64,000 bases of DNA, taken from NCBI GenBank assembly GCA_047495785.1, contig JBLDXI010000074.1, forward strand, positions 806,001 through 870,000, read 5' to 3'. The translations under genes were made by a program, and so were the position numbers. Below, one piece after another: positions 22,084 to 51,862 of the stretch. Each line of letters opens with the position of its first letter. The first letter of the stretch is position 1. A model generated the notes under the pieces. That model was given only the letters and a program-made list of their open reading frames with translations, searched no databases and was not told the origin of the DNA. This DNA comes from Lepidodermella squamata. Taxonomy: Eukaryota; Animalia; Gastrotricha.

Positions 22084-23217
22084 TTACACTTTAGGCCGGA
22101 AGACCTCGCTAATTCGCTGCGAACATATCGGACAGTTGGGGCTTTCTTTCTCATTTTCTTTATTAAGAATCTGAACCAGGCAGGAAAAATGAAGCGTATG
22201 GTTGCATGACAGCTGCACCCAATCGGCAAATGGTATATCACGGCCACACACATGGCAATCGCCAACTGATACGCCATCGTCCCTCCGATAGTCCTTCATA
22301 ATGTAGTCAACGGCCTCCTCCACTGCTCGTTTTGCTTGCATGATCGGCAAAGCTACCAGCTGGCAATATCGAAGCAAGACGTACCCCAGTAATTCAGCGA
22401 AACCTAACTCAGTTGGCGCTAGACCAAACTTAGTTTGACAGCCGTGGGCAAAGCTGTTCAGCTGATCTAAGCATTTTCTGCGAATAGATTCATTCTTTCG
22501 CGCAAATCGGCCTAATCCATTGTCAGTGAGAATCACGCGGTTGCCAATTTTGTCGAAAAATTGCTGCATTTCCGTATCATCTGCTCATAACGAGAACGAA
22601 TGAAGTATTTCAAAGCTTCAAAAGATAATACCCTTTAGCCATGTTTTCATAGATTCCTTCTGCGACGCCTCATCCATACCCTCGTTGTAATGCGTAGCGA
22701 CAACGATACAATTCGCAGCCCATTGAGAATCGAACATCTTGGAGATAAGAGTTAAATTGGCTCGTTCTTCTTTTGTAACGCGGCCATACTGCATCACAAT
22801 GACGATGCCATGCAGGCCCATTCTTGCTCTTCTTATGAAATAGGCCAAGTTGACTTTCAGTTCACTATTTGTGGAACCGCTATCCCCGAAACCAACTGTA
22901 TCAGCAAAAAGCGTGTTCATATTCGCATTCAATTTCCATTGTGGCTGTTTTGTAACGGAATTTGCGGTCGAGCCAACTGCGCATGGCGTCTTGCAAGCTG
23001 CCTCACTGACGTCCTGATTGAGCAGCATGTTGATTATCGTCGATTTACCTGTGCCGGCAGTCCCTAAAACGACGATAACGCGCCGAATCGCAACCTCCTT
23101 TTGGTCGAAAGTACTCTTCTGGCTGAAAGTAGCCTTTGCCAGTTGAAGAACGAGTCTGCCCATGTTTCCTGCATAGGGAACTGCAAGGTTGTGGAGTGCA
23201 GAGCCTTCATCTGACAT
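22084..23217 (-). CDS. AIG1/GIMAP-type GTPase + RING-H2 protein, subfamily A copy 1; exons 23217-22632 and 22580-22084
   Basis: G1 GTAGTGKS, G2 SVT, G3 DTVG, GIMAP-like box HGIVIVMQYGRVT, G4-like VATHY, NRVILTDN. C-terminal CHVC-x13-CNHTLHFSC...CPIC. 51-bp intron. Start codon (MSDEG) is uncertain. Confidence 0.88.
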
Positions 23218-24311
23218 TAGATAGCCGCAAAGGTAGAGCAGAATGTAACGAAAGTATGCAGAAGGTGTAGATTTAGCAACCCTCTTATTACGATTTTTTG
23301 TCGTACAAGGCTCTATGAAGAATCTTGAAATCGGGGAGCCAAAATGCAACTACTCTTTGAACTTTGGATTCAGTGAGTGATTCATATTACAAACAACATG
23401 CGATCAGGCAACACAGGCGTGAATGTGAAGCACGCGATTTTCGGAAGGCGTGGAACTAATTTTTAATTTTCACGCATTGGTTGCAAGAATTAGTCTCAAT
23501 TCTTGATCTCTTTATATCTATAAACAGTTGCTTCTCACTAACCGGAGAACATCATATCGTTAACGATGCGCCAAAACAACCACTTAGATGACTCATTCGA
23601 TCGTAGGTACTTCTAGTCGCCTAACGTAATGTTGAAGTACGTTAGGCCTTTTGAGCACCGATTTTTTCCTAATTTCGAACGTACTTTCCTCATAAAATCT
23701 ATAAATAGTAAAGTGGTTGTTTTGGCGCGTCGCTAACGATATTCGGATGTTTATACAGGAAAATCAGTTTTCGGATATCCGCAAAATATTGGTACCACCT
23801 TTTAGAGCATGAAATTCTGAGTAAAACGAGGTTAGACGCTTGGGGTCTCAAACCTAACGGGTCGGCTGGGGATGGGCTCAAATAGCAACAAATGCCTCAG
23901 GACCCCCGAAATTGCGCAATTTTGGGCAATTTCGGGAGTCTTGGTCCTCGGCAAATCACTATTTCCTTTTCCAAAAATTTATATTAAAATATTTTTTTCT
24001 CAGATAATGAAAGCAAAATAAATAAATAAATAAAAATTCAAAGGTCGTTTTTGGTGACCTGCGAACATCCGAATAAGACATTATGACATTCTATTAACAC
24101 CTAAATTTACCTCGTGCAGAATAAACCTGATTAAGTGTATTTTTCAAAACCTGGCTCCACATTTAATGGCGGGCCTTCATCAGTTGAATTATCCATTGCG
24201 CGCAAAAACGTATCTCTCGATATTTAATTGTTGAACAATGAAGTGTGGAACGCGGAAGCGTTAAAATTATTTCCATCCTCCATTTTAGAATAGCAAAAGT
24301 AAAGAAGTGTC

Positions 24312-25388
24312 ATGAGGGTGGTCCGGGATGTTCACATCAAAAGAGTAATCTACACCATTGGGACTTCGGGTACCGGAAAGTCAACGATTGCTAACATGGT
24401 GTACAACAACGACCACTCAGCTATTGCTTGCTCGGAACCTTGCGCCGTAGGTGCGTCAGCAAACTCGGTTACGAAACATTGTCGATGGATCTTTGAGCCT
24501 AAACGCGGCTACCTGTTCGCCGATACTTTGGGCCTGGGTGACCCTGAGAAACCGCTCCTGGAGGTAGCTGCGGAGCTGAGGAATATGATTGATACGGCCA
24601 AGTTGGGCGTGCATTGCATCTTGTTTGTGGTCAAGTTCGGCCGATTCACTGGGCCGCTGCTTACCAATTTGGAAGTCCTGCCACTTATCTTTGACAGCAC
24701 TTGGGCCGATCATTGTGTTTTGGTGGCCACTCATTACGAAGAAGAGTTCGGAGACTTACGAGCGGATCTAGCCAAGTGGGCTCATGAACAAGAAAAGTTG
24801 CAGGAATTTCTCAAGAAAATCAACTATCGTGTGATTTTTACGGATAATTCACTCGGCCGTAATGAGGAAGAAAACCGGTTGCTTTTGATTTGGAAATGTT
24901 TGTTTTATGTTTTACTATGTTTGTTTTTCAGCCCGATTCGACGCGACTGTCTCGCTCGACTGAACGGGTATATAGAGAATTTCGACTCGCTCACGCGCGC
25001 AGCAAGTGATGGCAAGCTTGATTACCTGGAGCGTATGAAATACGTTCTCAACAAATTGCTTGAAATATTGGGCGTGCGTAACAAGCAGAAATCTATCGAC
25101 GAGATGTTGCCGCGGTTGTTGCAGTCCGGCTGTGGCGTCGATACAGCCGTTACATGCCCACTGTGCATCGAAGATATCAACGTGCTGCAACTGTCTCAAA
25201 CGTCATGCAAACATGATTATCATACGGATTGTATTTCCCTTGTGGTGAAAAATCCAGGCGATCTCTGCCCCATGTGCCGCCAGCCAGTGACTCACATTTG
25301 TCGCCCTCTATTGCCCAATGAGCAGACGCCCAGCAAGTCCAACGCGCCTAATGGTCAGACGGCTAACGCCTCCAACGTCTCCGCCTGA
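24312..25388 (+). CDS. AIG1/GIMAP-type GTPase + RING-H2 protein, subfamily B copy 1; exons 24312-24877 and 24932-25388
   Basis: GTSGTGKS, DTLG, HCILFVVKFGRFT, VATHY, RING CPLC...CKHDYHTDC...CPMCR. A 54-bp intron sits at the same position as in B2 and B3. Confidence 0.9.
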   Translation: MRVVRDVHIKRVIYTIGTSGTGKSTIANMVYNNDHSAIACSEPCAVGASANSVTKHCRWIFEPKRGYLFADTLGLGDPEKPLLEVAAELRNMIDTAKLGVHCILFVVKFGRFTGPLLTNLEVLPLIFDSTWADHCVLVATHYEEEFGDLRADLAKWAHEQEKLQEFLKKINYRVIFTDNSLGRNEEENRLLLIWKCLFYVLLCLFFSPIRRDCLARLNGYIENFDSLTRAASDGKLDYLERMKYVLNKLLEILGVRNKQKSIDEMLPRLLQSGCGVDTAVTCPLCIEDINVLQLSQTSCKHDYHTDCISLVVKNPGDLCPMCRQPVTHICRPLLPNEQTPSKSNAPNGQTANASNVSA

Positions 25389-25878
25389 GATCATGGTCGA
25401 ACGGTCAAACGGCGCTAGTTCGCTAATTTAAACGTTACTCCAATGTGCTTATCCTACTTGTATTGCCAACTTGCCCATTCGCCATCCTCAGAACTCATGT
25501 TAGCGTGATAATAGGCTTATTTGCCTAACTGATTATAAGTCTGCTCGCGTCCTATAGTATTTACTAAAGGTGCGTTTTTTGACGCCTATTCATAGTTTAT
25601 TTAATAAAACTAAAAGGGGTATTTTATGATGAGTTTTTTGTATAAAAACTCATCAGAGTGCCAAGTGCCCACCCAACAGTCGCATCTACCACGACGAATT
25701 TCGATGTGAGCAAATATTACGGAAAATTGTTTGCGTTTGTAAAATGAGACTTCTGGTGACAACAGCAAATGCGTCGATAGCTGAATTGTCACGGCTCTTA
25801 TGTCGTCCTCAGCCGTTAACATATAGGCTGGATAGGTTGAATTGGCGCTTGGTTAATTCACCTGTTGGGTGAAATAAC

Positions 25879-26541
25879 TTGCCGCTCATTTTTGACAGCT
25901 CGTGGACTGATCGTTGCGTGCTGGTGGTCACTCATTATGAAGAGGCGATGACGGATCTAGACGCGAAACTGACAGAGTGGGCTGGTGAAGAAGGAGCTTT
26001 GCGGTCGTTTCTGGAGGAAATCAATCGACGGGTAATATTCAGTGAATATTATTCACCGATAATTCACTCGATCGCCATGAGGAGGAAAGTCAGTTTTGTG
26101 TAGATTTTTTGCATTGAAATCTAACACTTTACACGCAGTCCGATTCGGCGCGACTGTCTCAATCAACTGAACGCATTGATAGCTAATTCCAATTCGATCA
26201 CGCGCGCCGCAAGTCACGGCTTATTTGAACAACTTAGGCATAGAGAACGAAGTGATCACTTCGTTCTCTATGAACTTAGGTAAGCGTGTGAAATACATTA
26301 TCGAGAAAATACTGATACTGTTCGGCGTGCGAAATAAGCTGGAAATGTATGGATGAGATAATGCCACGTCTAATGGAGTCTGGTCACAGCGCCGGCACTA
26401 CAGTAGATTGCCATCTTTGCCTCGAGGAAATCAGCTAGCTGACGATGTGGCGAACGTCATGCAGCCACTGTTATCACTACGAGTGCCTGGGCCTAATAAC
26501 TGCCGTTTGTCCAGCTCACTAGTGACAACCGTCACTCGCCT
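25879..26541 (+). pseudogene. 5'-truncated, frameshifted subfamily-B GTPase-RING pseudogene
   Basis: Near-identical to B2 (35591-36218) from LPLIFDSSWTDRC onward. Lacks G1-G3, has indels, a 34-bp insertion at 26239 and a disrupted RING. Confidence 0.85.
26239..26272. mobile_element. 34-bp perfectly palindromic CATAG micro-MITE with perfect 8-bp TSD
   Basis: aacttagg[catagagaacgaagtgatcacttcgttctctatg]aacttagg; absent from the intact paralog B2. Confidence 0.85.
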
Positions 26542-26579
26542 TAAGTTCCGCTAAATAAAATTATTCGGTTTTAAATTCG

Positions 26580-26700
26580 TCCGGGTAGTAGAAATTCAGT
26601 TACCTATTGTAACGTTCAACCCTTTTACTTGCACGAGTGGAAAAAAAATCCAATTTCAAAGCCAGAAGTTTCCTCGATCACCTAAAAATGTCCGAGAAAA
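26580..26700 (+). repeat. Dispersed ~120-bp repeat, also at about 36940-37050 and 45522-45625
   Basis: Shared ggtagtagaa..cagtta..tcaaccctttt..aatttcaaa.ccaga...cctcg.tcacc.aaaaatgt in all three copies, same orientation. Confidence 0.7.
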
Positions 26701-27562: not shown

Positions 27563-30435
27563 TTAGCCAAGTAAGCCAAATGATGTCGCAGTTTGACCAC
27601 TTGGAATACTAAATATAACTCTTTCAACTTCGTCATGATTATTTTGAGCAGCCAGTTGCAACGCTGTCATTCCCTTGCAATCAGCAGAATGTACATTCAG
27701 CGTGGCGTAACCGACCAGAAGCCTGACGACTTCGGTTTGTCCATTTTCAGCTGCGATGTGCAACGCCGTCGAGCCGTTTGAGTTCCTTGCATTCAAGTCG
27801 GATCCCAATTCATCTACGAGAAATTTCACTATATCATCATGTCCCAATTGAGCTGCTAGGTGCAAGGGTGTCCAGCCGTCCATATCAACAGCACCCACGT
27901 TCACATCGTATTTAGCGAGAATCGCGACGATCTCAGCATTGCCCATCTGAGAGGCGATGTGCAACGGCGTCCAGCCATCTTGACCATCTGCGTTTATGTT
28001 AGCGCCGAACTCTTTCACCAGCATTTCCACGATCTCAGCATTGCCAGTCTGAGAGGCGAAGTGCAGCGGTGTCCAACCATCTACGTTGGGCGAATTTACA
28101 TTTCTACAGTTACGGCTGGCTAGAAAGCGCACAATTTCACATGAGCTTCTTTCCGCAGCGACATGAAGCGGCGTCGAGCCGTTTTTATCAACAGCATTGA
28201 CGTCCGCCCCAAACGTTTCTGTGAGAATCTTCACCACATCCGTGTTGCCCTCCCTGATAGCGACAAACAGGGGCATCGAGCCATCTCGATCATTTGCGTT
28301 TATGTTAGCTTCGAACTCTTCGACCAGCATTCTCACCAATTTAGCATTGTAAACCTTAGAAGCCAAGTGCATCGGTGTCCAACCATCTATATTGGCCGCA
28401 TCTACATTTCTCCTGTTATGTCTTGCCAGAATGCGCACGGTTTCACATGAGCCATGTTCCATAGCTAGATGTAGCGGTGTCGACTTAAAACAGTCGATAG
28501 CATTCACCGTTTTCTCGTTCGCAAGTAATTCGACAATTCCTGTTTGGCCCTGCTGCGCGGCGATATGCAGTGCTGTTCTTTGCAACGGATTTTTCGCGTC
28601 GGCATCGATATTTTCTGCTCGAAGTAGGATACTCACGATGTTGTAATAGCCGTGTGCACAGGAATTGAGCAGCGGGATCAAACCATTGGGTCCCGCGTTT
28701 ACGTTGGCTTTGAAATTCTCCGCAAGAACACCTACGACTTCAGCGTGCCCGTTAACACATGCGATATATAATGGCGTAGAACCGTTATTTTGAGGAAGCT
28801 CTATATGCGCGCCAACTTTCCCAGCCAAAATTCTAACTGCTTCAGCATTGCCGAATTCAGCAGCGATGTAAAGCGCTGTCCGGCCCATCGCGTCTACAGC
28901 TCCAAGATCCATGCTAAATTTTCTTTTCAACAGAAGCCTCAATAGCCCATTTTGCCCTTTCTGAGCCGCGACCATGAGTAAATTCAAACCGTCCTCATCT
29001 TTAATGTTCACGTCGATCTTGCAGGACGTCTTCGATATGATTATTTCAAACTGAAACAAATCCATTTCGCCCAGTTTTGCGCGATTGGAACGAACCTGAT
29101 ACAGGTAACCTGGAACGTAGAAAGGGAACAAATCATCGTGCATCAAGAAGGTGTACCTTCCACATGAGCTTATTGTATTGAGTTGCATTGACGTCAATCT
29201 TTCTTTGAGATAATATTGGGCTTTGAGCCAGGTCCATTGCCCCTGCTCTCCTCCTATTGTCCTTAATCAGCATAGAGTAAACGAAATATTGGAATTCCTC
29301 CGAATAGCTTCTTTCTTTGTGGAATGGTTTGGGTTCTCTTCTGGAATGCATCAAATTTTCATTACAATATACTCAAAGAAAAGTGTTCCATGAGAGCTCC
29401 GCTAATAAAGAATCGGAATTTACCCATTTACGGCAATTTTACTACGATAAATTATATATATTGATCGTCGACTTACTTAATGATGTCATCTTCGGTCACA
29501 AACTGTGTTGAAAATGGAATGAAATAAGGCCAATGAATATTATGATTACGCGGAAGGGACTTACTGGCCTGTAAGAGTTGGCAAACTCGAAAAACGTCAC
29601 ACCTAGTGACCACCAGTCACTAGCCTCTGAACATCGCTCGTTGTTGAAGGTTTCTGGAGCTCTGTATGCAGGTGAACCGGCACCAATAAGTGTGGTGGTC
29701 TCCAACCTTGCATAAGAGGTAGAAGGTAGACGATTTCAGTCAGCTACTGTAAGTTCATTTAATAATTTCTTACCCAAGTCCGGACATTTTAGCCAGGCCG
29801 AAATCGCCTAGTTTCAAAGTCTTCTCGTCCTCACATAGGAATATATTTTCTGGTTTGATGTCGCGATGCAAAGCACGGCAGCGGTGAATTTCACAAACAG
29901 CCGACACTAACTGCCGCGCCCAGTCTCGAAGATCACTTTCAGGAATCTTTCTCTTTCGTTTGATGAATTGCGCCATGTCACCTCTCGAACAATGCTGCAT
30001 GACCAAGTAGTAAATGCTGTCACCTGTTCGCCCAGGGACTTTGCCCGCTTCGTGCCAGTTTTCTATACAAGGTTCAACGTATTTCGCCAAACCAAAATTC
30101 AAAAAACCAAATAATTACCTTCAAAAGCGTCGAGTATTGACACAATGTTGTCATGCTTTATACTTTTTATTATCGTGTGCTGTAATCTGATGGTAAGGCT
30201 TTTCATAATCATTATCTGACCACCTCACCTCTTTGCGACACAATTCCACAAGTTTCATCCCGCTTATGACGTCGTCATTCTTTTGGCGCTTTCGCAATAT
30301 ATCGTTGAGATTAACAGCCTTGACCACGCAGTCCGCGCAATCACCGTTTATTCTCTTGCAAAGCCAAACGCAACCGAAAGACCCTCGTCCAAGCTCTCTC
30401 GTTATCTTGAATTCCGTTGTAAATCTAGCTTCCAT
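27563..30435 (-). CDS. NEK-like Ser/Thr kinase fused to 14 ankyrin repeats; exons 30435-30229, 30179-30119, 30062-29774, 29706-29565, 29502-29477, 29340-29157, 29095-27563
   Basis: LGRGSFG, VVK, HDNIV, HRDIKPEN, DFG, GSPAYRAPE, DWWSLG motifs, followed by 14 TPLH-type ankyrin motifs. All junctions can be joined in phase. Confidence 0.88.
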
Positions 30436-32397: not shown

Positions 32398-33455
32398 TCA
32401 AACTAGATCGGCTTGCATTCTAGGCCGGAAGACATTTTGAATCAACTGCGAGCAAATCGGGCAGCTGCGGTTTCCGTGGCGCATGTTTTCCCAAATGCAG
32501 GAGAAATGAAACGAATGGTTACATGTTGCCTGTGCCCATTCTTCAACACGTATCTCAGTGTTACAAATTTCACAAGTACCAACTGACACGTGAGCTTCGT
32601 TAGCAATGTACTCGATGGCCTCAGCCGCTCTCTGTTTCACGCCAAGCAACGGAGCGCTGATCCCCGGGAAATATCGAAGCATAATGTACTGCAACGTTTG
32701 GGCGATACCTATCGGCGCGGGACCAAACTTGGTTTGACACTTGTTGATGAACGCGGTCAGCTTGTCGAGGCAATGTCTTCGAATGGGTTCATTCTTCAGG
32801 GCAAATCTTCCCAATCCATTGTCAGTGAGGATAACCCGATTGCCAACCTTTCCAAAGAACTGCAACATTTCGTCATCTCCTGCCCTTACATGATAGTATA
32901 TTTTAATGGATTCGAAAGCTTGATATTATTACCTTCAAGCCAGGTGTTTGTTGATTGCTTTTGGGACTGCTCGTCCATTCCCTTTTTGTAATGCGTAGCG
33001 ACTACTATGCAGTTGTCGGCCCAACGAGGATCGAACATTTTCGAGATGAGAGCCAAATTCGCTCGTTCTTCAGCTGTAACGCGGCCATATTTCATCACTG
33101 TGACAATGCCATGCAAGCCCAGCTTCGCCCGTCTTATAAATGTTGACAAGTTGAATTTCAGTTCAGAATTTGAAGATCCACTATCGCCGAAACCAACTGT
33201 ATCGGCTAAAAGCGTGTTCATTTTCTCATTCAAAATCCATTGCGGCTTTTTGGTCACTGAACTTGCGGTCGAGCCAACTGCGCACGGCGACTTGCATGAA
33301 GCCTCGCTGATGTCTTGATTGTGCAGCATGTTGATAATCGTCGATTTGCCTGTGCCCGTAGTTCCAACAACCAAGATGATACGCCGGATTGCTACGTCCT
33401 TGTCATTGATTGCTGTATCGTCGATGGCGCTCTTATGTCTGCCGAGTAGGAACAT
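32398..33455 (-). CDS. GTPase + RING-H2 subfamily A copy 2; exons 33455-32933 and 32879-32398
   Basis: GTTGTGKS, DTVG, YGRVT, VATHY, RING CEIC...CNHSFHFSC...CPIC. 53-bp intron at the same site as A1. The ATG used by A3 is AAG here, and an in-frame ATG lies 7 codons upstream. Confidence 0.88.
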
Positions 33456-35224
33456 AATCAGTGCGACTTTTATGCTCAAACTGCGCTTTCCACTTAGAAT
33501 TTAACCAAGTTTGCTTCTAATGACACAACGAACGAATGGCACTTGATAAAGCAGCTGACAGAAGGAGAGGATAGGATTGAATTTAACAAAAAGGTTATAG
33601 GGTGCAAAATTCGAATGTGATGTTGACGCGGTCGATCATAAATAAAGGAAGCCGCCGTCGAGCACAGAACCTAGGATGCGGGTTTAGCACGGTCAGAACC
33701 TAGCGAGATTCGGTGGTTGAGGGCTATTTTGTAATTATCCTCCATTCGCAGTATCTTGACTTGCAACTTGCAGTATCAGAGCTGCGGAACTAGCGCAAAT
33801 TCAATTTTCGAACTTTCCTGACTATAACGCCTGCTTTAACGCTAGACATTGCATTGAATTGCGGATTCAAAGCAATACCGGATGTCATCATAGCCAAAAT
33901 TAACTGAATCGTAAAGTTTAGAGCCTATTAGGATTAATACTAATTATTGGGTCAAATTGTTCTAACCGAAAATTGAGGTGGAAAGTTATTTTGAAATGGA
34001 TTTTGGAAATAATTGAACCTTACAATGAATTTTTACTAGCTCTGACAATCCAAGTCATCAGTGAGAATAGGTGATAATGACATGAACTCCTTCATCAACC
34101 AAAGCTCACTCGTGGTATAGAGGGTTTACCTCAAACTATCATGCCAAATGTCGTGAGTTCTGTGCCCTGCGGCCGCGCATTCCTTGCTTGACCATAATCG
34201 CGCAAGTAAAAAAAATTGGCTAAACAGCTACAAACTTAAATCATGAATTATCAAAAACAATCTGTGACCGGGGCTCGTTATGGATACAAGAGATGCAGCA
34301 AACAGCCTTTTCATCATCCATGTGTATTAAACCACGAGTTTGTGATCCGCCCTTATACTTGCTTCAATAATTATATTCATCTAAAACCACGTTTTCTTGA
34401 AATTCTGCCAACCTCTACGAGGGGTGAGCCGAAATTTCGGGTAGCCAAAATACTCGGTACCAATCCGAACCGACCCGAATAGTTCGGTTGCCGTATTTTC
34501 AAAGCTTGATTAGGTTCGGTTCGGTTTGGTTATCCCGAAAAAAACCGAATTTTGTTTATTTCTGATTTGATTGTAGCTTATTTTATTAACAGTTTGAAGT
34601 CGTAGTCTTAATTGAGCACAGGTAGATTGTATTTACAGAATGTTAAAATCTCTGCTTTTTCGCCGTTCAATGAGCACCGATTCTGAAAAAAAAATTCTCC
34701 GTTTTATCGTGCCGCATTATACTGCGCCATATTTTCAATGATTTCGGAAATTCCACAGCTGGCAATTAGGTCATAAGATCAGCCTAAAGAAATATGTTGC
34801 TAATTCGATTCTTATTGCCGATTCCCAACCCGCTTTCCTTCTCCTCCATGCCTATACGAAGTATGGGGAAAAAGAGGTAAGGCTCGAGAGGCCTAGGCAA
34901 GAAAGCGAGAAAACCCGAGAAAACCACAGGCGGGAAATTTTTATCGGAAAATTTCTCCGAAACGCCCCTAGCTCGGGGAAGCTACTTCGGACTCCAGAGA
35001 GCAAAAAGCATTGAAAATCCAGATGATATCGTAGTGTCTATAGCAAAAGATTTCTATGTTCTTACCTTGCCTGCCTGCTTGCTCCTACTCCCAAGGTTCA
35101 AGGTCGATCGCAAAGTGCTCCGAGAGATGTTGGTGAGTGAATGTGCAGTTTTCATTGCCCAAACACTTTCAACCCCTTCGTGATCACAGTCTTCAATAGA
35201 ATAATAAACTAGTAAAGAGCTCTC

Positions 35225-36270
35225 ATGGAAGTGGTACATGATGTTCACGTCAACAGAATCATCTACACTATCGGGAGGTCGGGTAGCGGAAAGTCAACGA
35301 TCGCTAACATGCTGTATAACATTGAATACTCAGCTATCGCTTGCTCACGACCTTGTGCGATTGGCGATACAGCAAACTCTGTTACCAAAAAATGCCGATG
35401 GATCTTTGAGCCTAAACGTGGCTACCTGTTCGCCGATACTGTCGGCCTGGGCGACCCTGAGAAGTCGACCACGGAGGTTGCTATGGAGCTAAAAAGGATG
35501 CTTCGAACAGCCGAGCTGGGCGTGCACTGCATCTTGTTTGTCGTCAAGTTTGGCAGGCTTACCGCCGAAGAGATGAAGAATTTCGAAATCTTGCCGCTAA
35601 TATTTGACAGCTCGTGGACTGATCGTTGCGTGCTGGTTGTCACTCATTATGAAGAGGCGATGACGGATCTAGACGCGAAGCTAGCAGAGTGGGCTGGGGA
35701 AAAAGGAGCTTTGCGGTCGTTTCTCGAAAAAATCAATCGGCGGGTAATATTCACCGATAATTCACTCGATCGCGACGAGGAGGAAAACCGGTGAGTTTTT
35801 TTGTAGAATAATTGTTTATTGAAATCTTACACTTCATACGCAGTCCGATTCGGCGCGACTGCCTCAATCAGCTGAACGCACTGATAGCTAATTCCGATTC
35901 AGTCACGCGCGCCGCAAGTCATGGCTTTCTTGAACAACTCGAGCGTGTGAAATACATCATCGAGCAGATACTGATACTGTTCGGCGTGTGGAATAAGCAG
36001 AAATGTCTCGATGAGATGCTGCCACGTCTGATGGAGTCTGGCAACAACGTTGGCACTGCAGTAGACTGCCCGCTTTGCCTGGAGGAAATCAACGTGTCGA
36101 CGATGGGTCAAACGTCATGCAACCACTTTTATCACTACGAGTGCCTTCGCATGGTGATCAATAGCCCTGGGGATAGCTGCCCCTTGTGCCGTTCACCAGT
36201 GACAACCGTCACTCGCCCTTTGTTACGTGATGAGAAAGAGACCGAACCGCCGCCAGCCGATGGCAATTAG
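35225..36270 (+). CDS. GTPase + RING-H2 subfamily B copy 2; exons 35225-35790 and 35844-36270
   Basis: GRSGSGKS, DTVG, FGRLT, VVTHY, RING CPLC...CNHFYHYEC...CPLCR. Intron gtgag...cag of 53 bp. Confidence 0.9.
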
Positions 36271-39243: not shown

Positions 39244-39388
39244 TTGTCAACTCACAAACGGTGACAGTATGGGGGTTCCCCCCGGCATTAGTATTTATTT
39301 GGATTAACAGAAATCAACCAAAGTTTGTTTCGATGCAACCAATGAAGTTTTGCGGAAACTAGTTGCAACAAAAAATCAGCAATCTCTT

Positions 39389-42041: not shown

Positions 42042-42268
42042 AGCCGTGTTTCGAAAATGTATAACGCTGTTATCACATGTTATAGTCATCTGTTATCTTC
42101 CAAAAATCAGATAATGTACGCCCTAGGTCAGATAACAGGCGCGTCCTTTTTCATTGTTTAATTTACGCAATTAAGGTCAAAAGACATTTCTTGACGAAAA
42201 TTGGCAAGTCTCTAATTAGGTCAAAATGCCTCAAATCTCTTGAATAATCTTTTAGACACGGATTTCTA

Positions 42269-42857: not shown

Positions 42858-43023
42858 CAATTTTCGCAGCGCAAATTAAAAAATAAACCCGAATATCGTC
42901 CTTAATTTGATGCGCGCACAAGAACCAAAAATGCAGCAATGAAAAAATTCAAAAGCTGTGTTAAGACGACCATTGTGCGCATTTATTACGCAACATCAAC
43001 AAAACAACAGCGTTATATCACAC

Positions 43024-43130
43024 AACTGAGTGTTATTCTAAATTAGACTCGTAACAATCAGATAACAGGCTCGGCTCCGCCTCGCCTGTTATCAGCTTGT
43101 TACTCGCCTAACTTAGAATAACACTCAGTT
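43024..43130. repeat. Long imperfect hairpin, probably a transposon terminus
   Basis: aactgagtgttattctaa...gataacaggc-[tcggctccgcctc]-gcctgttatc...ttagaataacactcagtt. Confidence 0.65.
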
Positions 43131-44196: not shown

Positions 44197-44983
44197 TCAT
44201 TGAAAGCCAAGGAAAGTTTTCAGTTGTTGCCGTCGGGCAGCAACAGTAGCATTAGGCTGCGCAGCAAGGCCGTAAAAAGCTAACAAACGGTTGACATTGA
44301 GGCTGGTAAGGAGTCGTGGCGCGGCGAAATGCGAAATCGACCCGGTGCAACGTTCGATTCGGTGGATACCGAATGGCGATCGATTCGCCTGGGCTCGCTG
44401 ATTTTTGATGCTCGTGGTTTATTTTTTGCACCTCGAAAAGTTGCCTGGTAATAAAAAGAGATGGTAATAAATGACGATTATGCAGAAATGAATCGAAATC
44501 TTACATCTCGTACAGAAGTCCATTGGCCCGTTCTTGACCCGCTTGAAGTGCCCCCATAGCGGCCATAACATCGTTGCGAAATTCCGCCAACGCCGCCAGA
44601 ACAGGGTCTTGGGCTGCGGGCGCCGGAGCTCCAGCGTTGCCAGCAACGGCAGCTTTTCGTCCGTTCATGTAAGCGCTGAAATCAATCAGTCGTTGAGGTG
44701 TTACGGCGAGGCGATGACCGGCTGCGGTTTACAATAAAATCAATGACAAATTATGTTGAAATTAAGAGTGCAAATCAACGTCGAGTGATGAATGAATGCA
44801 GAGTGAGTGCGTACCTGCGTTAAGGCGAATTAACTGGATTAGGATAGAGTCCAAAGCCGGGATTTCGCCGGGCGCACCTGGCTGCGGCAGCGGTTGCAAA
44901 GCGGCTAGATCGGCCGCGTTATCAGCTGCGAATTGCTGCCGAACTTGATCCAACATATCACCGGCTTGTAGATGATTATCCAT
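44197..44983 (-). pseudogene. Three-exon member of the coiled-coil/Mug135-C-like family with an apparent frameshift in exon 3
   Basis: Same intron phases (1, 2) as 41173-42041. Exon 3 reads QLFEVQKIN...YPPNRTLHRVDFAF, then in another frame LTSLNVNRLLAFYGLAAQPNATVAARRQQLKTFLGFQ*. Confidence 0.65.
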
Positions 44984-46815
44984 GGCTCGCAAAATGTCGA
45001 ATTTCACGCGATTTGATCACGAGTGAGAATAATGAACGAGTTTGAAAAAGGAGAACAATTATTTGGTATTTGAAAATTGGTGATTTGAAAATTTAAGTTG
45101 GATTTTTGCAAAATAATTTTTCTCCTTATACCAAGCGCAATGGTCGTACGATACTTCAAGCAGAGCCAACGAAACTATTTAGTCGTAGATATTTCAACCC
45201 AAATTGGAGAATAATTCGCGCAGCGACAAATCAGCTCGCGACAATTAGCCAAAATTCTGTTAAATCACAATTAGGCCATGGTCTCGAAGTGATGATCTTA
45301 CCTCGTACAGAAAACCACGCAGAATTTCATGACAATTTATTTATATTTTTAGTAATAAATTACGAAAACCTGGTTTATTTGCATGTGAAATTTTGGCGAT
45401 CAATCAGATCAATTGTTTCTAATTAGTGATTTTTAGATATTAGTCATTTGACACCGAATTATTTGAATTTCATTTTGGTACGAAAATCGCCACGATATTC
45501 GAAAGTATCCATTGACATCAATTGGTAGTAGAAGTTCAGTTATTTCAGCTCTCAACCCTTTAACCGGTTGAGGAAAAATATAATTTCAAAACCAGATAAG
45601 TCCTCGGTCACCCAAAAATGTCGAAAAAAACCACACTACAGCATCTATCAGTCAAGAGAATTCATACACTGTAAAAAATGGGAGGGTGATTACCCCGAAT
45701 TTACTCTAGTCAATTGTATGGCGCTTGGGGGGTAAAATACACACGGGGTGCATTGAAATTACTCTTCAGAGTTTTTTTCGTAAGGATTATTTACCACAGA
45801 GTAACTATCCTTCAGCATTTCTTTCATTGAAGATACGCAAGGGTGAGAAACCCGTGGTAAAAATCAATATGGCTAGTCTTATTTGTGTACATCGAATATA
45901 AATCGAACGCAAGCATAAATATGTCAGTCGAACATGATTGCTCCAATATGCTAAATCGCCCCCGACCCCCGAAGGTCAAGCCTAGTAATGGCTCTGTGCT
46001 GGCTACTAGAAAGCCTTTCAACTCTTATAGATACGGCCAGAATTTCTGTCTGAATTTGGCGTCAGAGGTGTGGTCAACGCGTATGCTAACAATTCAGTGC
46101 AAAATGCTGCGCGGAAGTTCCTTGCCAGAGTCACCAAATAAATCGATCCAGCGTCGAATCCGTGATAGATAGAGACATTTGCTGCATTAGAATCGCCGAA
46201 AAATTCTGCTACTGGCACAACACATTTGGTTGCTGGCACAGCCCTTCTGGAGAGGCCATTAAAACAGATTTTCGTTATCCTTTTCCTGATTTGAAGTATC
46301 CTCGCCCAGACTTGTCTCAAAAAATCGTTCCACCTTAAAAACGGTGATAACTACAAGCACGGGGTTTGATGCGTTGGATTTGCCAAACAATTCTGCTGCT
46401 GGCACAAAGCTTTCCATGCGTCGGCGGTGCGTCAAATGATGAAAGTTATCGATTTCGACGAGATTCAGCCTCATTTTTCATTTCAAAATTTATTTAAAAT
46501 CGTGCAATGATTAAACCCTCGCCAAAGCACCAGGGTAATCACTGGCGCTCTAACGAATGGTGCCATTTTTGGAGGTGGCACATGCTCACCTGGGGTCAAA
46601 AAGGTGACACAAAATGTCAATTTTGTCACATTTGGGGTCAAACCGTTAAATATCTCCTAAACCGTGTTTTAGTAGTACAAAAAAGAATTGCAGATTCTGA
46701 TTCAGCGCAAAATTTTACCCTTTTATCCACCAAGTATCATGACTGGCACACACTGTCGCACCACATGCAGCGACGCTAATGCCACTCGCGGATGACCTGA
46801 AAATGTCCCGAATTC

Positions 46816-47102
46816 CTTAGTGGAACCATCGAATCCACAAAATCGCCATTGGCTGGGCTAACATTTGTTGAAGGACGTGATTGGTTAGATTTTCCAGCAT
46901 CCTAGCGTGTAATTTCTTGAACAGAAAGAAATTCCTGAATTTCCCAGGTTCGATTCGCGGTGGCCGAGCGTCGTTTTTTCTGAGATTTTTTAACTTTTCG
47001 AGAAATAACGTGCTAAGATGCTGGAAAATCCAACCAATCAGGTCCTTCAACAAATTTTAGCCCAGCCAATGGCGATTTTGTGGATTCGATGGTTCCACCA
47101 AG
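46816..47102. mobile_element. MITE with ~100-bp inverted arms
   Basis: gtggaaccatcgaatccacaaaatcgccattggctgggctaa...ttagcccagccaatggcgattttgtggattcgatggttccac. Confidence 0.8.
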
Positions 47103-48066: not shown

Positions 48067-49670
48067 CTAATTGCGATCAGCTGGTGGCGGCCCACCAGGG
48101 AACTGAGGGCGCGTGATGGCTGTAAGTGGTGAGCAGCACATAGGACAGTTTTTATCCGTGCGTAGTGCCCTGCTTAGGCAGTCGTGGTGAAACAAGTGAT
48201 TGCATGACGTATGACACATCGCCGACACTTTGATTTCCGTGAGGCAAATAGGGCAGTCAACTCCAGTGCCAACGATGTGGCCAGTCTCCTCCAAGCGATG
48301 TAACATCTCATCGATAAATCTTTGCTGATTTTTCACGCCGAACAGTATCAGTCTTTGCTCGATGATGTATCTCAAACGATCGTTTAGCTCAACAAAATTA
48401 TGACTTGCGGCGCGGGTGATCGAATTGGATTCTATTATCATTTTGTTTAGTTGATCGAGACAGGCGCGCCGAATCTGCCTGCGTATAAAGTGCATTAAGA
48501 TTGCATTAAAAATTCGCTCTATTCCGGGCCCATATTAGTTTAGTCCGGCCCCTAACCGTCGGTTGCGCAATTACGTAATAGCGGGTAATAGTTGGTAATA
48601 GCGGAAAAACGCTAAGTCAAAATTCTAAACAGAGTTTTGGCCGCCCTTGCAGATGTCAAAAGGGATAACGTCGATTTTAGTAGGGTTTTCATTCCAAAAT
48701 AAAATTCGGGGTTGGTATTCTTACTTGAATAAGTACGCATTTCTTGTTATTCGCAGTTAAACCTTGAGGCTAATACAATTAGTATATTAGTGTATTAGTC
48801 TCAAGACTTAAACGGCTTTATGGTTACGCCGGAAAGATCAAGAAACCTATAAGATATAAGATACTGAACCTTAGATCGAGCTTCACAATTCATAGGGAAA
48901 GGCCCTTTATTTTGCCAACAAATTTGACATTGCCACGTTATCTCAGCCTTCTAGATGAGATACTATCCTTGCTCAGTTTTAAATGTTGAATATTATCGTA
49001 CAAATATCAAATATTACGTAACCGATCATGCGCCGTCATGCGCAACCGATGTTTAAGGGCCGGACGAAACCACTTGGGGCCTGGATTTGAAACAAATTAC
49101 TCACCGGTTGTCCTCCTCGTAGCGACCGAGTGAATTATCGGTGAATATTACACGGCGATTGATTTTCTTGAGAAACGCCTGCAAAGCTCCTTCTTCCCCA
49201 GCCCACTCTGTTAGTTTCGCGTCTAGATCTGTCATCTCATCTTCATAGTGAGTGACCACCAACACGCAACGATCAGCCCACGTGCTTTCAAAAATGAGCG
49301 GCAATATTTCAAAATTATTCATCTCCTCGGCGGAGAGCCGGCCAAACTTGACGACAAACAAGATGCAGTGCACGCCCAAATCGGCTGTTCGAAGCATCCT
49401 TTTCAGCTCCATAACTTCATGCGTGGCCGACTTCTCGGGGTCGCCTAGGCCCACAGTATCGGCGAACAGGTAGCCACGTCTAGGATCAAAGATCCATCGG
49501 CAATCTCTGGTGACAGTGTTTCCTGTATCGTCAAGTGCACAAGGTCTCTTGCAAGCATCAGCGGAGTAGTCATTGTTATACAGCATGTTAGCAATCGTTG
49601 ACTTTCCGCTCCCCGATCTCCCGATGATGTAAATGATTTTGTTGACGCGAAAATCCCGTTCCGCCTCCAT
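48067..49670 (-). CDS. GTPase + RING-H2 subfamily B copy 3; exons 49670-49105 and 48478-48067
   Basis: GRSGSGKS, DTVG, FGRLS, VVTHY, RING CPIC...CNHLFHHDC...CPMC. Same intron site as B1 and B2, but 626 bp long. Confidence 0.88.
48523..49085. mobile_element. TIR element inserted in the B3 intron
   Basis: Degenerate TIRs tccgggccc..gtccggcccctaaccgtcggttgcgca / tgcgcaaccgatgtttaagggccggac..gggcctgga; accounts for the intron expansion relative to B2. Confidence 0.7.
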
Positions 49671-50099
49671 GAGAGCTCTTTAAAATCGTATTCTATGGAA
49701 GACTGGGAACAGAAATGGGTTGGTAGTGTTTGCGCAATGATAAACTGACCAACATCTCTCTGAGGTTTTCAAGATCGACCTTAAGTATTGGGAGTATGAG
49801 CAAGCAGGCAAGCTCGGTTTTCGGTGGCGCTTCTGATTTCTGATGGCGGGGCACTTCCTCCTAGACAGTTGCCAGCTGTCCCCCCAGTGCTCGCCGCTGG
49901 TTTTTCACCGCAGCTCTCCCGTGTGCTACCTGCTACCGTGTGCTGCGTGGGAAGTGATGATGGGTCACTGCACACGTGTAACCTACGCCCGCCCCATCGC
50001 GAGCCTCAAGCAAGTGTTTCAACTTGTACTCAAGTACCGGAGTTTTATTTTATCCAGCGACTTCGGTCGGCCGCTGTCGTGAGCGCAAATTCTTGTGCA

Positions 50100-50181
50100 G
50101 ACGCGGGCGTTGAACCCGTGCCTCACTAGAACCACACTAGCATACCCAATGCTAGTTGCCTAACCACTAGGCTACTGTGTC
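50100..50181 (-). mobile_element. tRNA-derived head of a probable SINE (body may extend to about 49820)
   Basis: Minus strand has A-box TAGCCTAGTGG and B-box GGTTCAACGCC, but an imperfect acceptor stem and an abnormal anticodon arm. Absent from the homologous A2/B2 spacer. Confidence 0.5.
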
Positions 50182-50816
50182 ACCATAGTGTGGTTTTTTC
50201 CGGCTTTCTCGTTAGACCTCTCGAGTCGAAAGATGCTCTATTTCTCTATCGTATAGGCCCTGATGAGAAGGGAATAAGAATCGAGTTAGCAATTTCGCAA
50301 AATATGTCTCTAGGCTGATCTTATGACCGGATTGCCAGCCTTGGGATTACCAACATCTTTGACAAAACGGGCACAGCATAGAGCTATAATCTGCGTACTA
50401 TCTTGCTATAAAAGTAACTAGCCATTTCAACTAGCTAGAACTGGTCATCAAACGTAGTAATTTGAAACGTATCTTCTTAATCATGAGCTGATATATATGG
50501 TAAAAAACACTCGGCTGCGATAAAGGCGGAGGATTAGGCGTAATTTCAAGATAGCGTGGTTACAAGAGGAATAGTTATTGAAGCAAGATATAAGTACCAA
50601 GTTCAAAGCGCCATAAGCATTTTCACATTTCACCTCGCCAATCCGAATTTTGGTCGCTTGAAAACTAAATTCAATCCTGTCGTCTCCTTCTGTAATCTGC
50701 TTTATTGAGTACCTGATATGTTTGTTGTCTCACTAGTAGCAAACTTCGTTGAATTCTAAGCAAAAAGCGCAGTTTGAGCATAAAAAGTTGCACTGATTAT
50801 CTGATTATCCCTACAT

Positions 50817-51862
50817 ATGAGCGCCATCAACGATTCAATAATCACTGACAAGGAAGTTGCAATCAAGCGTCTCATCTTGGTTGTTGGAACTACAGGCACA
50901 GGTAAATCGACCATTATCAACATGCTGCACAATCAGGACGTCAGTGTGGAAGCATGCCAAATGCCATGCAAAGTTGACTCGACCGCAAGGTCTGTGACCG
51001 AAAAGCCTCAATGGATTTTAATTGAGAAAATGAACACGCTTGTTGCCGATACAGTTGGTTTTGGGGATAGTGGATCTCCACATTCTGACGTGAAATCGAA
51101 TTTGTCAACGTTTATGAAAAGGGCAAGACTCGGCTTTCATGGCGTTATCATAGTGATGAAATCTGGCCGCGTTGTAAAGGAGGTACGATTGAATTTGGCT
51201 CTCATCGAATCCATGTTCGATCATCAATGGGCCTCCAACTGCATTGTTGTTGCTACGCATTACGATGGGAAAATGGATGAGGAGTCTCAAAAGCAATCTA
51301 TAACCGATTGGCTTAAAGGTAATAACATCAAGCTTTCGAATCCATCACTTTATACAATCATGTAAGGGCAGGAGATCCCGTAATGTTGCAGTTCTTCGAA
51401 AGACTTGGCAATCGATTGATCCTCGCCGACAATGGATTGGGCAGATATGCTCAGAAGAATGAACCTATTCGTAGAAATTGCCTCACCAAGCTGAACAGCT
51501 TCATCAACAACTGTCAAACCAAGTTTTTTCCTGCGCCGGAAGGTCTCGCCGAAACTTTGCAGAGCATTCTGAGTAAATATTTGGAGATGTACACCAGCAC
51601 TACATCGCAGGAGCTAAAAAAGAGGGCGGCAGAGGCCCTCGAGTGCATTGGCAAAGAAGCTGGCTTGTCAGTTGGCAATTGCGGCTTATGTAAAAAAGAC
51701 ATAGGCGTTGAACAATGGGGACAGGCAACATGTCACCATTCGTTTCATTACTCCTGCGTTTCGGACAAGCTGCGCCAAGGAGAGCGCAACTGCCAGATTT
51801 GCGAGCAGTCGATAAGGAATGTCTTTCGGCCTAAATTGCAAGCCGATCTAGTTGAAAGTTGA
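50817..51862 (+). CDS. GTPase + RING-H2 subfamily A copy 3; exons 50817-51318 and 51372-51862
   Basis: GTTGTGKS, DTVG, SGRVV, VATHY, RING CGLC...CHHSFHYSC...CQIC. 53-bp intron nearly identical to that of A2. Confidence 0.9.

What the first reader, a model, noticed from the sequence alone, without database searches (positions are those of the whole stretch)
22084..51862. Head-to-head A/B pairs of GIMAP-type GTPase-RING-H2 fusion genes, repeated three times: candidate two-component ubiquitin-ligase defence system
Seen: six intact genes encode an AIG1/GIMAP-like G domain (G1, DTxG, GRxT box, THY, RVIxTDN) fused to a C-terminal RING-H2. They form two clearly distinct subfamilies with different intron positions (A: phase 1 after WLK/WLE; B: phase 2 after ENR/DNR). 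Every intact gene lies in a divergent A/B pair with 1.1-1.8 kb between starts: A1 23217/B1 24312, A2 33455/B2 35225, B3 49670/A3 50817. The only unpaired copy is a pseudogene. Known: AIG1/GIMAP GTPases are immunity-associated and dimerise through their G domains (GIMAP7 stimulates GIMAP2), and plant NLR sensor/helper pairs are also head-to-head. I do not know of a described GIMAP-RING paired system. Inference: A and B are co-expressed and form a GTP-gated heterodimeric E3 ligase, duplicated as a unit.
Basis: partly seen in the sequence, partly recalled or inferred. Interest (0 to 1): 0.92.

Follow-up and report, generated by a model that had tools for sequence, protein, structure and literature searches.

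The report
Paired GIMAP-GTPase/RING ligase gene cluster
An unidentified invertebrate carries three back-to-back pairs of genes that fuse an immunity-type GTPase to a ubiquitin-ligase RING finger; the fusion belongs to a widespread but unstudied eukaryotic family, the pairs were copied as whole units, and whether the two partners work together is still untested.

Summary
Six intact two-exon genes (325-360 aa) encode an AIG1/GIMAP G domain plus a C-terminal RING-H2 finger. They form two subfamilies, A and B (55-70% identity within, 32-37% between), with different intron sites, in three divergent A/B pairs. The only other copy in the window is a 5'-truncated, frameshifted B pseudogene. cDNA-like contigs of a public run show A1 and B1 spliced exactly as modelled.

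The pairs were duplicated as units. The A and B trees mirror each other, synonymous divergences match, and the spacers of pairs 2 and 3 are collinear.

The architecture is not unique. About 48 clusters among the best 150 database hits share it: Hydra, the sponge Sycon, a choanoflagellate, an amoebozoan, Rhodelphis and Symbiodinium. I found no paper describing it. In Hydra, Symbiodinium and a protist contig the gene has no paralogue within about 10 kb, so pairing is specific to this lineage.

The A:B heterodimer idea is untested. Hints for it: subfamily-specific changes in the switch regions, and each subfamily has lost different conserved residues. Against it: both keep full GTPase and zinc-ligand sets. 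Other notes of this scan report more GIMAP-RING genes elsewhere in this genome, with unknown pairing.

Verdict: a new variant of a known kind, moderately interesting.

The parts
22084..23217 (-). A1 gene (coding sequence): exon 1 23217..22632, 51-nt phase-1 intron 22631..22581, exon 2 22580..22084; 360 aa. Transcript runs from at least 23316 to a poly(A) site at 21771.
   Evidence: model, Pfam AIG1 + zf-RING_2; spliced contig, poly-T loose end at 21771, contig reaching 23316
23218..24311 (.). Spacer of pair 1 (1094 nt). About half is high-copy repeat (23481-24028), including a 189-nt MITE at 23554-23742 with 32-nt terminal inverted repeats.
   Evidence: depth up to 28767 against ~30 in DNA run X2; no RNA contigs at 23344-23480 or 24029-24302
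24312..25388 (+). B1 gene: exon 1 24312..24877, 54-nt phase-2 intron 24878..24931 (in frame and stop-free, hence one 358-aa ORF), exon 2 24932..25388; 340 aa.
   Evidence: (joint 24876->24931, GT..AG)
25871..26540 (+). B-type pseudogene. It starts at about codon 123, has several frameshifts and stops, and holds a 34-nt palindrome insert. It is closest to B2 (77% nt) and shares B2's 3' flank (26553-26691 ~ 36909-37045).
32398..33455 (-). A2 gene: exon 1 33455..32933, 53-nt phase-1 intron, exon 2 32879..32398; 334 aa.
33456..35224 (.). Spacer of pair 2 (1769 nt). It is collinear with spacer 3 in blocks along its whole length, with about 770 nt of extra inserted DNA.
35225..36270 (+). B2 gene: exon 1 35225..35790, 53-nt phase-2 intron, exon 2 35844..36270; 330 aa.
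48067..49670 (-). B3 gene: exon 1 49670..49105, 626-nt phase-2 intron holding a 573-nt MITE (48518-49090, 52-nt terminal inverted repeats), exon 2 48478..48067; 325 aa.
49671..50816 (.). Spacer of pair 3 (1146 nt). Pair 3 is an inverted copy of the pair-2 unit.
50817..51862 (+). A3 gene: exon 1 50817..51318, 53-nt phase-1 intron, exon 2 51372..51862; 330 aa.
   Evidence: (a loose end of RNA-like run X1 matches A3 at 23 of 23 bases)

Best explanation
The locus is a lineage-specific, birth-and-death cluster of an unstudied but widespread eukaryotic family: a GIMAP/AIG1-type GTPase with a C-terminal RING-H2 ubiquitin-ligase finger.

History. An old inverted duplication produced two subfamilies lying head to head. 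B keeps the ancestral intron and the RING 'linchpin' arginine. A has a moved intron and has lost that arginine. This A/B unit was then copied twice as a whole, and one copy was inverted.

Proposed mechanism (inferred, not shown). GTP binding drives dimerisation through the G domains, as in GIMAP7 and GIMAP2. That brings two RING fingers together into an active dimeric E3. The conserved 'GR' arginine then triggers hydrolysis and resets the switch. In this cluster the favoured dimer is A with B, made from neighbouring divergently transcribed genes. The likely role is cell-autonomous defence.

Shown: architecture, fold, splicing, transcription of A1 and B1, duplication as units, phyletic spread.

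Inferred: E3 activity, GTP gating, A:B pairing, immune role.
For: Architecture and fold:
- Pfam AIG1 + zf-RING_2.
- Best PDB sequence matches are GIMAP7, GIMAP4, GIMAP1 and GIMAP5.
- The AlphaFold2 model of B1 (pLDDT 84.6, pTM 0.83) has GIMAP7, GIMAP5, GIMAP2 and GIMAP1 as top structural hits, then Toc34/33.
- Family-wide near-invariant residues are the P-loop, the switch-I Thr, DxxG, the 'GR' Arg and all eight zinc ligands. The 'GR' Arg aligns to residue 108 of the GIMAP7 chain.

Duplication as units:
- Trees are (A1,(A2,A3)) and (B1,(B2,B3)), with similar branch lengths.
- dS is 0.33 for A2-A3 against 0.39 for B2-B3, and 0.95 for A1-A2 against 0.92 for B1-B2.
- Non-coding DNA of pairs 2 and 3 is collinear.

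Hints of coupling:
- All six paired genes are intact at dS up to ~0.9, while the one partnerless copy is broken.
- 36 subfamily-specific fixed differences are densest at the end of switch I and in switch II.
- Against a 48-sequence outgroup consensus, A has lost the Arg after the last RING Cys (69% conserved). B has lost an Arg (81%), an Asp (92%) and a Gly (77%).
- A1 and B1 transcripts occur in the same run.

Literature: GIMAP7 stimulates its own GTPase and that of GIMAP2, and GTPase activity is regulated by dimerisation (PMC8201404).

Selection: omega is 0.14-0.47 in the G domain and 0.30-1.49 in the helical and RING parts.
Against: - No interaction, E3, GTPase or induction data exist.
- Both subfamilies keep complete catalytic and zinc-ligand sets, so either could act alone.
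- The three pairs stem from only two duplication events, so retention of pairing is weak statistics.
- Homologues in Hydra, Symbiodinium and a protist contig are solitary.
- The B-like RING state (linchpin present, no tail aromatic) is the commonest in the family (23 of 48), so the 'complementary loss' reading is soft.
- Transcript 5' ends lie about 1 kb apart with transposon DNA between them, so a shared promoter is not evident.
- Other GIMAP-RING genes noted elsewhere in this genome may be unpaired.
Confidence: 0.4

Rival explanations
1. Independent enzymes, with pairing inherited by descent. A and B are separate GTP-regulated RING ligases that each homodimerise and have different targets. 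The head-to-head layout is a relic of one inverted duplication and was carried along passively by two later segmental duplications.
For: - Both subfamilies keep all GTPase motifs, the 'GR' arginine and all zinc ligands.
- Family members elsewhere are solitary.
- Segmental duplication explains the mirrored trees and matched dS without any functional link.
- Spacers are largely transposon-derived and not conserved between pair 1 and pairs 2/3.
- Both subfamilies match the family consensus equally well, 53-59 of 75 columns.
Against: - A and B have stayed adjacent since a split as deep as that from the Hydra homologue (32-37% identity).
- Both genes are intact in every unit at dS ~0.9, while the lone copy decayed.
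- A has lost the RING linchpin arginine that 69% of the family keeps.
Confidence: 0.35
2. Asymmetric regulator/enzyme pair. B is the working E3, while A is a derived partner whose RING is catalytically weak. A would serve as a sensor, adaptor or inhibitor, as in MDM2/MDMX or BRCA1/BARD1-type heterodimers or plant sensor/helper NLR pairs.
For: - A has S/S/E where 69% of the family has Arg after the last RING Cys.
- A has a derived switch II (GDSGS against the family's GDP) and a derived intron site.
- B shares its intron site and phase with Hydra.
- A keeps a tail Phe eight residues after the last Cys, which B lacks.
Against: - B3 has also lost the linchpin (Cys).
- B has lost other strongly conserved residues, including an Asp kept in 92% of the family.
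- The roles assigned to the linchpin and the tail aromatic come from my memory of other RING dimers and were not tested here.
- No integrated decoy or extra domain is present in A.
Confidence: 0.15
3. Housekeeping membrane or organelle GTPases with a RING used for self-regulation (auto-ubiquitination, as proposed for TRIM23). On this reading the genes are not a defence system.
For: - The family is spread across very distant eukaryotes, including free-living protists.
- An E2 gene lies next to one protist member.
- The G domain is under purifying selection.
Against: - Local amplification, a pseudogene, a transposon-rich setting and raised omega (up to 0.67 overall, 1.49 in the A2-A3 RING) fit a fast-evolving conflict family better.
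- The distribution is patchy and the clusters are small.
Confidence: 0.1

Closest known systems
Vertebrate GIMAP GTPases (GIMAP7, GIMAP2, GIMAP5, GIMAP1)
   Same: - AIG1-type G domain by Pfam, by PDB sequence search and by fold search.
- The 'GR' arginine aligns with the GIMAP7 arginine in LGRYT.
- A helical extension follows the G domain.
- The genes are clustered in the genome.
- GIMAP GTPase activity is dimerisation-controlled and GIMAP7 acts on GIMAP2 (PMC8201404).
   Different: - No vertebrate GIMAP carries a RING.
- These proteins have no membrane anchor.
- Identity to GIMAP7 is only about 20%.
- A heterotypic A:B dimer is not shown here.
Hydra vulgaris LOC100213925 (XP_012563599, 'uncharacterized protein') and unnamed relatives in Sycon, Mylnosiga, Pyxidicula, Rhodelphis and Symbiodinium ('Gimap4')
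   Same: - Same G domain, helical region and RING-H2 architecture at similar length.
- 34-38% identity to both A and B.
- The Hydra intron has the same site and phase as the B-type intron.
- Hydra falls in the same well-supported 14-sequence clade of the tree.
   Different: - These homologues are solitary: there is no paralogue within 10 kb in Hydra or Symbiodinium and none in the protist contigs.
- None has been functionally studied.
TRIM23 (ARD1)
   Same: One polypeptide with both E3-ligase (RING) and GTPase activity, used in antiviral autophagy (PMC12075517, PMC5794181).
   Different: - The RING is N-terminal and followed by B-boxes and a coiled coil.
- The GTPase is of the ARF class, not AIG1.
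- It is a single-copy conserved gene, not a paired expanding family.
Head-to-head paired plant NLRs (sensor/helper pairs such as RGA4/RGA5, from my own knowledge)
   Same: Divergently transcribed neighbouring paralogues of an NTPase immune family, proposed to act as a hetero-complex and inherited as a unit.
   Different: - The NTPase class (STAND ATPases) and the output are different.
- No integrated decoy is seen here.
- An interaction is demonstrated for the NLR pairs but not here.
Heterodimeric RING E3s (MDM2/MDMX, BRCA1/BARD1, RING1B/BMI1; from my own knowledge)
   Same: Two paralogous RINGs in which only one is fully competent. The A-type RING lacks the Arg after the last Cys that most of the family keeps.
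   Different: - Those RINGs dimerise through RING-flanking helices or tails, not through a GTPase.
- The RING asymmetry here is only a sequence hint.

Membership tests
AIG1/GIMAP GTPase family (Pfam PF04548) | Match to the AIG1 profile above the curated cut-off | tested here: met
   43.8-61.6 bits against a cut-off of 27, for the A1, B1, B2 and A3 exon-1 products
AIG1/GIMAP GTPase family (Pfam PF04548) | GIMAP-type G-domain fold, closest to solved GIMAP structures | tested here: met
   The B1 model (pLDDT 84.6) has GIMAP7 3zjc as top Foldseek hit (E 2.6e-12), then GIMAP5, GIMAP2 and GIMAP1, then Toc34/33. phmmer against PDB gives GIMAP7 at E 6e-11.
AIG1/GIMAP GTPase family (Pfam PF04548) | G1 P-loop, switch-I Thr, G3 DxxG, and a hydrophobic 'conserved box' followed by the GR arginine | tested here: met
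   All are present in all six genes. G17/G20/G22/K23, T54, D71/G74 and R111 are at least 90% conserved across 50 family rows.
AIG1/GIMAP GTPase family (Pfam PF04548) | GTP binding and dimer-dependent hydrolysis | not testable with these tools
   Needs biochemistry.
RING-H2 E3 ubiquitin ligases (zf-RING_2, PF13639) | C-x2-C ... C-x-H-x2-H-x2-C ... C-x2-C ligand pattern | tested here: met
   The pattern is intact in all six genes and in 48 outgroup clusters. The RING region of the model has pLDDT 95-98.
RING-H2 E3 ubiquitin ligases (zf-RING_2, PF13639) | Profile score above the curated cut-off (27.3 bits) | tested here: inconclusive
   B2 34.4 (above), A1 27.3 (at the cut-off), B1 26.8 and A3 21.8 (below).
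RING-H2 E3 ubiquitin ligases (zf-RING_2, PF13639) | E2 binding and ubiquitin transfer | not testable with these tools
   Only indirect evidence: CP-x-C is kept (A3 has CQ-x-C); the Arg after the last Cys is kept in B1 and B2 but not in A1-A3 or B3; an E2 gene neighbours a protist homologue.
Two-component head-to-head immune gene pair (as in paired NLRs) | Divergent adjacent arrangement inherited as a unit | tested here: met
   There are three divergent pairs, with mirrored trees, matched dS and collinear spacers.
Two-component head-to-head immune gene pair (as in paired NLRs) | Co-expression of the partners | tested here: inconclusive
   Spliced A1 and B1 contigs occur in the same RNA-like run. 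That is one sample, and contigs give no reliable expression levels. A shared promoter is not shown.
Two-component head-to-head immune gene pair (as in paired NLRs) | Physical and functional interdependence of the partners | not testable with these tools
   No multimer prediction or assay was available. There are only sequence hints.

The most novel reading that the evidence does not exclude
A and B are obligate partners of a GTP-gated heterodimeric ubiquitin ligase. Nucleotide-driven pairing of two diverged GIMAP G domains would assemble an asymmetric RING dimer, in which B binds E2~ubiquitin and A supplies trans-acting or regulatory contacts. The two genes would be kept head to head and amplified together as a defence module. 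This would be the first mechanistic output assigned to a GIMAP-type GTPase.
Probability: 0.25. Interest if true: 0.8.

Novelty: new variant of a known kind. Interest (0 to 1): 0.55.

Why it matters
What GIMAP/AIG1 GTPases do biochemically is still unclear, despite their strong links to immunity in vertebrates, molluscs, corals and plants. A natural fusion to a RING finger gives this GTPase class a readable output, ubiquitination. The fusion recurs from amoebae to sponges and cnidarians, and I found no paper describing it.

This locus adds a compact, expressed set of three co-duplicated A/B pairs with short introns. That makes three questions directly testable with recombinant proteins:
- Does G-domain dimerisation gate an E3 ligase?
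- Is the dimer heterotypic?
- Does such a module act in invertebrate defence?

If the pairing turns out to be only historical, the finding shrinks to a new, unannotated GTPase-E3 family.

Tried and rejected
- **Word-indexed protein search with B1:** no hit. This was a sensitivity limit, because the exhaustive phmmer search found 547 hits.
- **Genomic context in other species:** the closest homologues (P0001, P0006, P0007, P0008) sit only on 1.5-2.7 kb transcript-like contigs from different samples, so they give no context.
- **Hydra, Symbiodinium and protist contigs:** none shows a paired paralogue.
- **Literature:** searches for AIG1/GIMAP with RING/E3 found no description of this architecture. 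The GIMAP surveys of cnidarians/dinoflagellates and of Biomphalaria do not mention a RING.
- **ESM Atlas feature and fold searches:** only AIG1 clusters with other partners came up.
- **Earlier notes of this scan:** searches by sequence or combined words returned nothing, and places outside the window could not be addressed.
- **Haplotig or assembly artefact:** rejected. The pairs are only 72-84% identical in DNA, and the DNA run covers A1 and B1 at single-copy depth.
- **'Complementary RING degeneration' as strong evidence:** downgraded, because the B-like state is the commonest in the family.
- **Organism:** not identified. Run labels are coded.

Full report
**1. Observation**

The window is animal DNA. 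It holds a Cys-loop channel ligand-binding domain and a DM9 ORF, and its introns are about 53 nt long. Between 22084 and 51862 there are six two-exon genes, and their exons were already visible as ORFs. I located GT..AG introns that join them in frame.

| Gene | Strand | Exon 1 | Exon 2 | Length |
|---|---|---|---|---|
| A1 | - | 23217..22632 | 22580..22084 | 360 aa |
| A2 | - | 33455..32933 | 32879..32398 | 334 aa |
| A3 | + | 50817..51318 | 51372..51862 | 330 aa |
| B1 | + | 24312..24877 | 24932..25388 | 340 aa |
| B2 | + | 35225..35790 | 35844..36270 | 330 aa |
| B3 | - | 49670..49105 | 48478..48067 | 325 aa |

- A introns are phase 1 after WLK/WLE. B introns are phase 2 inside the Arg codon of ENR/DNR.
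- The 54-nt B1 intron is in frame and has no stop, which is why B1 appears as a single 358-aa ORF.
- The B3 intron is 626 nt because a 573-nt MITE with 52-nt terminal inverted repeats (48518-49090) sits in an otherwise 53-nt intron.
- Identity is 55-70% within a subfamily and 32-37% between subfamilies.
- Start-to-start spacers are 1094, 1769 and 1146 nt.

**2. Domains and fold**

- Pfam gives AIG1 at 43.8-61.6 bits (cut-off 27) and zf-RING_2 at 21.8-34.4 bits (cut-off 27.3).
- The C3H2C3 ligand pattern is intact in all six genes.
- By sequence, the nearest solved structures are GIMAP7, GIMAP4, GIMAP1 and GIMAP5.
- I predicted the B1 structure with AlphaFold2, using the ORF with its retained intron because a spliced protein has no reference, aligned with 49 family rows. 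The model has pLDDT 84.6 and pTM 0.83. The RING reaches pLDDT 95-98, and only the intron-encoded loop and the C-terminal tail are poor.
- Foldseek ranks GIMAP7, GIMAP5, GIMAP2 and GIMAP1 first, then Toc34/33 and the IRGs.
- Three long helices lie between the G domain and the RING.
- Residues at least 90% conserved across the family are the P-loop, the switch-I Thr, DxxG, the Arg of the 'GR' motif and all zinc ligands. That Arg aligns to residue 108 of the GIMAP7 chain, which by my count is native Arg103. Its reported role as catalytic arginine is from my memory.

**3. Transcription**

One public run (X1, labelled only as a guess at RNA) behaves as cDNA.
- One contig skips exactly 22581-22631 (CT..AC on the + strand) and ends in a poly-T loose end at 21771.
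- Another contig skips 24878-24931 (GT..AG).
- The DNA run X2 keeps both introns at a single-copy depth of about 30.

A1 and B1 are therefore transcribed, spliced as modelled and present in the same sample. X1 contigs reach 23316 on the A1 side and start near 24303-24446 on the B1 side, with none at 23344-23480 or 24029-24302. The two 5' ends are thus about 1 kb apart.

Half of that spacer is high-copy repeat. Depth reaches 28767, and the repeat includes a 189-nt MITE at 23554-23742.

Loose ends in X1 match A3 exactly (23 of 23 bases). They also match a B-like sequence that is not in the window. More paralogues are therefore expressed.

**4. Other copies in the window**

A tblastn search with the six proteins finds one more copy, a B-type pseudogene at 25871-26540 (+), just downstream of B1.
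- It lacks about 120 N-terminal codons.
- It has several frameshifts and stops and a 34-nt palindromic insert.
- It is closest to B2 (77% nt) and shares B2's 3' flank.

**5. Duplication as a unit**

- In a six-gene tree in which A and B root each other, the topologies mirror one another: (A1,(A2,A3)) with support 88/87 and (B1,(B2,B3)) with support 87/89.
- Branch lengths are similar for partners: A1 0.23 and B1 0.34, A2 0.15 and B2 0.07, A3 0.41 and B3 0.37. Alternative topologies are not rejected (p-AU 0.08-0.14).
- Synonymous divergences match: 0.33 (A2-A3) against 0.39 (B2-B3), and 0.95 (A1-A2) against 0.92 (B1-B2).
- Pair 3 is an inverted copy of pair 2. Similarity extends through both UTR flanks and in collinear blocks along the whole spacer.
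- The pair 1 spacer retains only about 25 nt of similarity before the B start codon.

The A/B unit was therefore duplicated twice as a whole.

Omega is 0.29-0.67 overall. It is lowest in the G domain (0.14-0.47) and higher in the helical region and the RING (0.30-1.49).

**6. The family elsewhere**

The word-indexed search found nothing. The exhaustive phmmer search of 1.84 billion cluster representatives gave 547 hits, 23 of them below 1e-30. Among the best 150, 48 clusters have a P-loop followed about 250 residues later by a RING-H2, at 295-480 aa.

Named members:
- Hydra vulgaris XP_012563599, 'uncharacterized protein'
- Four Sycon ciliatum proteins
- Mylnosiga fluctuans (a choanoflagellate)
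- Pyxidicula operculata (Amoebozoa)
- Two Rhodelphis marinus proteins
- An MMETSP transcript
- Symbiodinium natans 'Gimap4'

In a 43-row tree, A and B are each monophyletic (100/100). Both fall in a supported 14-row clade with the Hydra protein, but their relation to each other inside it is unresolved. A and B are as far from each other as from Hydra, so the split is old.

The Hydra gene has its coding intron at the same site and phase as the B type (AG|A in the Arg codon of ANR). The B intron is therefore ancestral and the A intron derived.

No second copy lies within 10 kb in Hydra or Symbiodinium, nor on the protist contigs carrying P0019. On those protist contigs an E2 (UQ_con) gene lies about 500 nt upstream on the same strand, a small independent link to ubiquitin.

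I found no paper that describes an AIG1-RING protein. The GIMAP surveys of cnidarians/dinoflagellates (PMC8857920) and of Biomphalaria (PMC7053062) do not mention one. The Biomphalaria survey lists death, kinase, ARM and Hint partners instead. Large ESM Atlas clusters show AIG1 with Macro, PARP14-RRM, Hint or RanBP zinc-ribbon partners, but none with a RING.

**7. Does A work with B?**

Nothing here tests this directly.

*Hints for coupling:*
- Adjacency has survived since a very old split, while the spacers turned over.
- All six paired genes are intact at dS up to about 0.9, while the partnerless copy decayed.
- The 36 subfamily-specific fixed differences are densest at the end of switch I and in switch II. 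From my memory of GIMAP structures, these regions form the G-dimer interface.
- Each subfamily has lost different family-conserved residues. A has lost the switch-II Pro and the Arg after the last RING Cys, which is 69% conserved in the family (S/S/E in A). B has lost an Arg (81%), an Asp (92%) and a Gly (77%).
- A keeps a tail Phe eight residues after the last Cys. B has C/T/T at that position.

*Against coupling:*
- Both subfamilies retain every catalytic motif and match the outgroup consensus equally well (53-59 of 75 columns).
- The B-like RING state is the commonest in the family (23 of 48).
- B3 has also lost the Arg after the last Cys.
- The three pairs represent only two duplication events.
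- Homologues elsewhere are solitary.
- Other notes of this scan list GIMAP-RING genes 61 kb and 539 kb away.

**8. Mechanism**

The best-supported reading is a nucleotide-controlled E3. GTP-dependent G-domain dimerisation is the mode known for GIMAP2 and GIMAP7 (PMC8201404). It would bring two C-terminal RING-H2 fingers together, and hydrolysis triggered by the conserved arginine would reset the switch.

My estimates for the partner question:
- About 0.4 that the relevant dimer here is A:B.
- About 0.35 that A and B act independently and the layout is only inherited.
- About 0.15 for the asymmetric regulator/enzyme version.
- About 0.1 for a non-defence role.

The immune role is an inference from four things:
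- The family's associations with immunity elsewhere.
- The birth-and-death pattern of the cluster.
- The transposon-rich setting.
- The many other AIG1 and RING-H2 fusions that other readers noted in this genome.

**9. Comparison and verdict**

- By fold and motifs, these proteins are members of the AIG1/GIMAP family and of the RING-H2 class.
- They work most like TRIM23, which has an E3 and a GTPase in one chain (PMC12075517), but with another GTPase class and the opposite domain order.
- The gene layout recalls paired plant NLRs.

The fusion family appears to be undescribed but is already present in public protein sets. The co-duplicated divergent A/B pairing is, so far, specific to this lineage. 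I rate it a new variant of a known kind, with interest 0.55.

Noticed in passing
window 48518-49090: A 573-nt MITE with 52-nt terminal inverted repeats (79% complementary) sits inside the B3 intron. It inflates a 53-nt intron to 626 nt without breaking the gene model.
   Followed up: partly
window 23481-24028 (MITE 23554-23742): This is a very high-copy repeat in the A1/B1 spacer. Summed contig depth reaches 28767 against ~30 for flanking single-copy DNA in the DNA run. The core is a 189-nt element with 32-nt inverted ends (94% complementary).
   Followed up: partly
window 27566-30433 (-): This is a probable single gene between pair 1 and pair 2. Protein-kinase exons (30433..29499, Pfam Pkinase) are followed on the same strand by a 544-aa ORF of about 14 ankyrin repeats. 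That kinase-then-ankyrin order resembles RIPK4/ANKK1. The splice junctions were not worked out.
   Followed up: partly
window 24878-24931: The B1 intron is 54 nt, in frame and free of stops. Intron retention would therefore add 18 hydrophobic residues rather than truncate the protein. The RNA contig shows the spliced form.
   Followed up: yes
protist metagenome contigs carrying P0019 (ENA ERZ27248668, ERZ27249030; no DNA served for either): A 260-aa ubiquitin-conjugating enzyme gene (UQ_con) lies about 500 nt upstream of the GIMAP-RING gene on the same strand, on two independent contigs. A Tox-ART-HYD1 (weak) ORF and a separate RING gene lie nearby.
   Followed up: no
window 36501-47102: The 12 kb between pair 2 and pair 3 has no Pfam-recognisable ORFs but many dispersed repeats and long palindromes. 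Repeats: 36501-36719 ~ 42041-41812, 36942-37045 ~ 45524-45621, 39390-40004 ~ 44511-45176. Palindromes: 46816-47102 and 43016-43138.
   Followed up: partly
window 17240-17713 (+) and 3358-5892 (-): A DM9-repeat ORF (E 1.6e-23) and a large ORF with a Cys-loop channel ligand-binding domain lie upstream of the cluster. DM9 proteins are lectin-like immune factors in some invertebrates (my own knowledge).
   Followed up: no
RNA-like run X1, loose ends at window 22880, 23055 and 24483: Contigs that run off the A1/B1 reference continue into sequence identical to A3 (23 of 23 bases) and into a B-like sequence that matches no copy in the window (best match 21 of 30 to B2). More family members are therefore expressed, and at least one lies outside the window.
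   Followed up: partly
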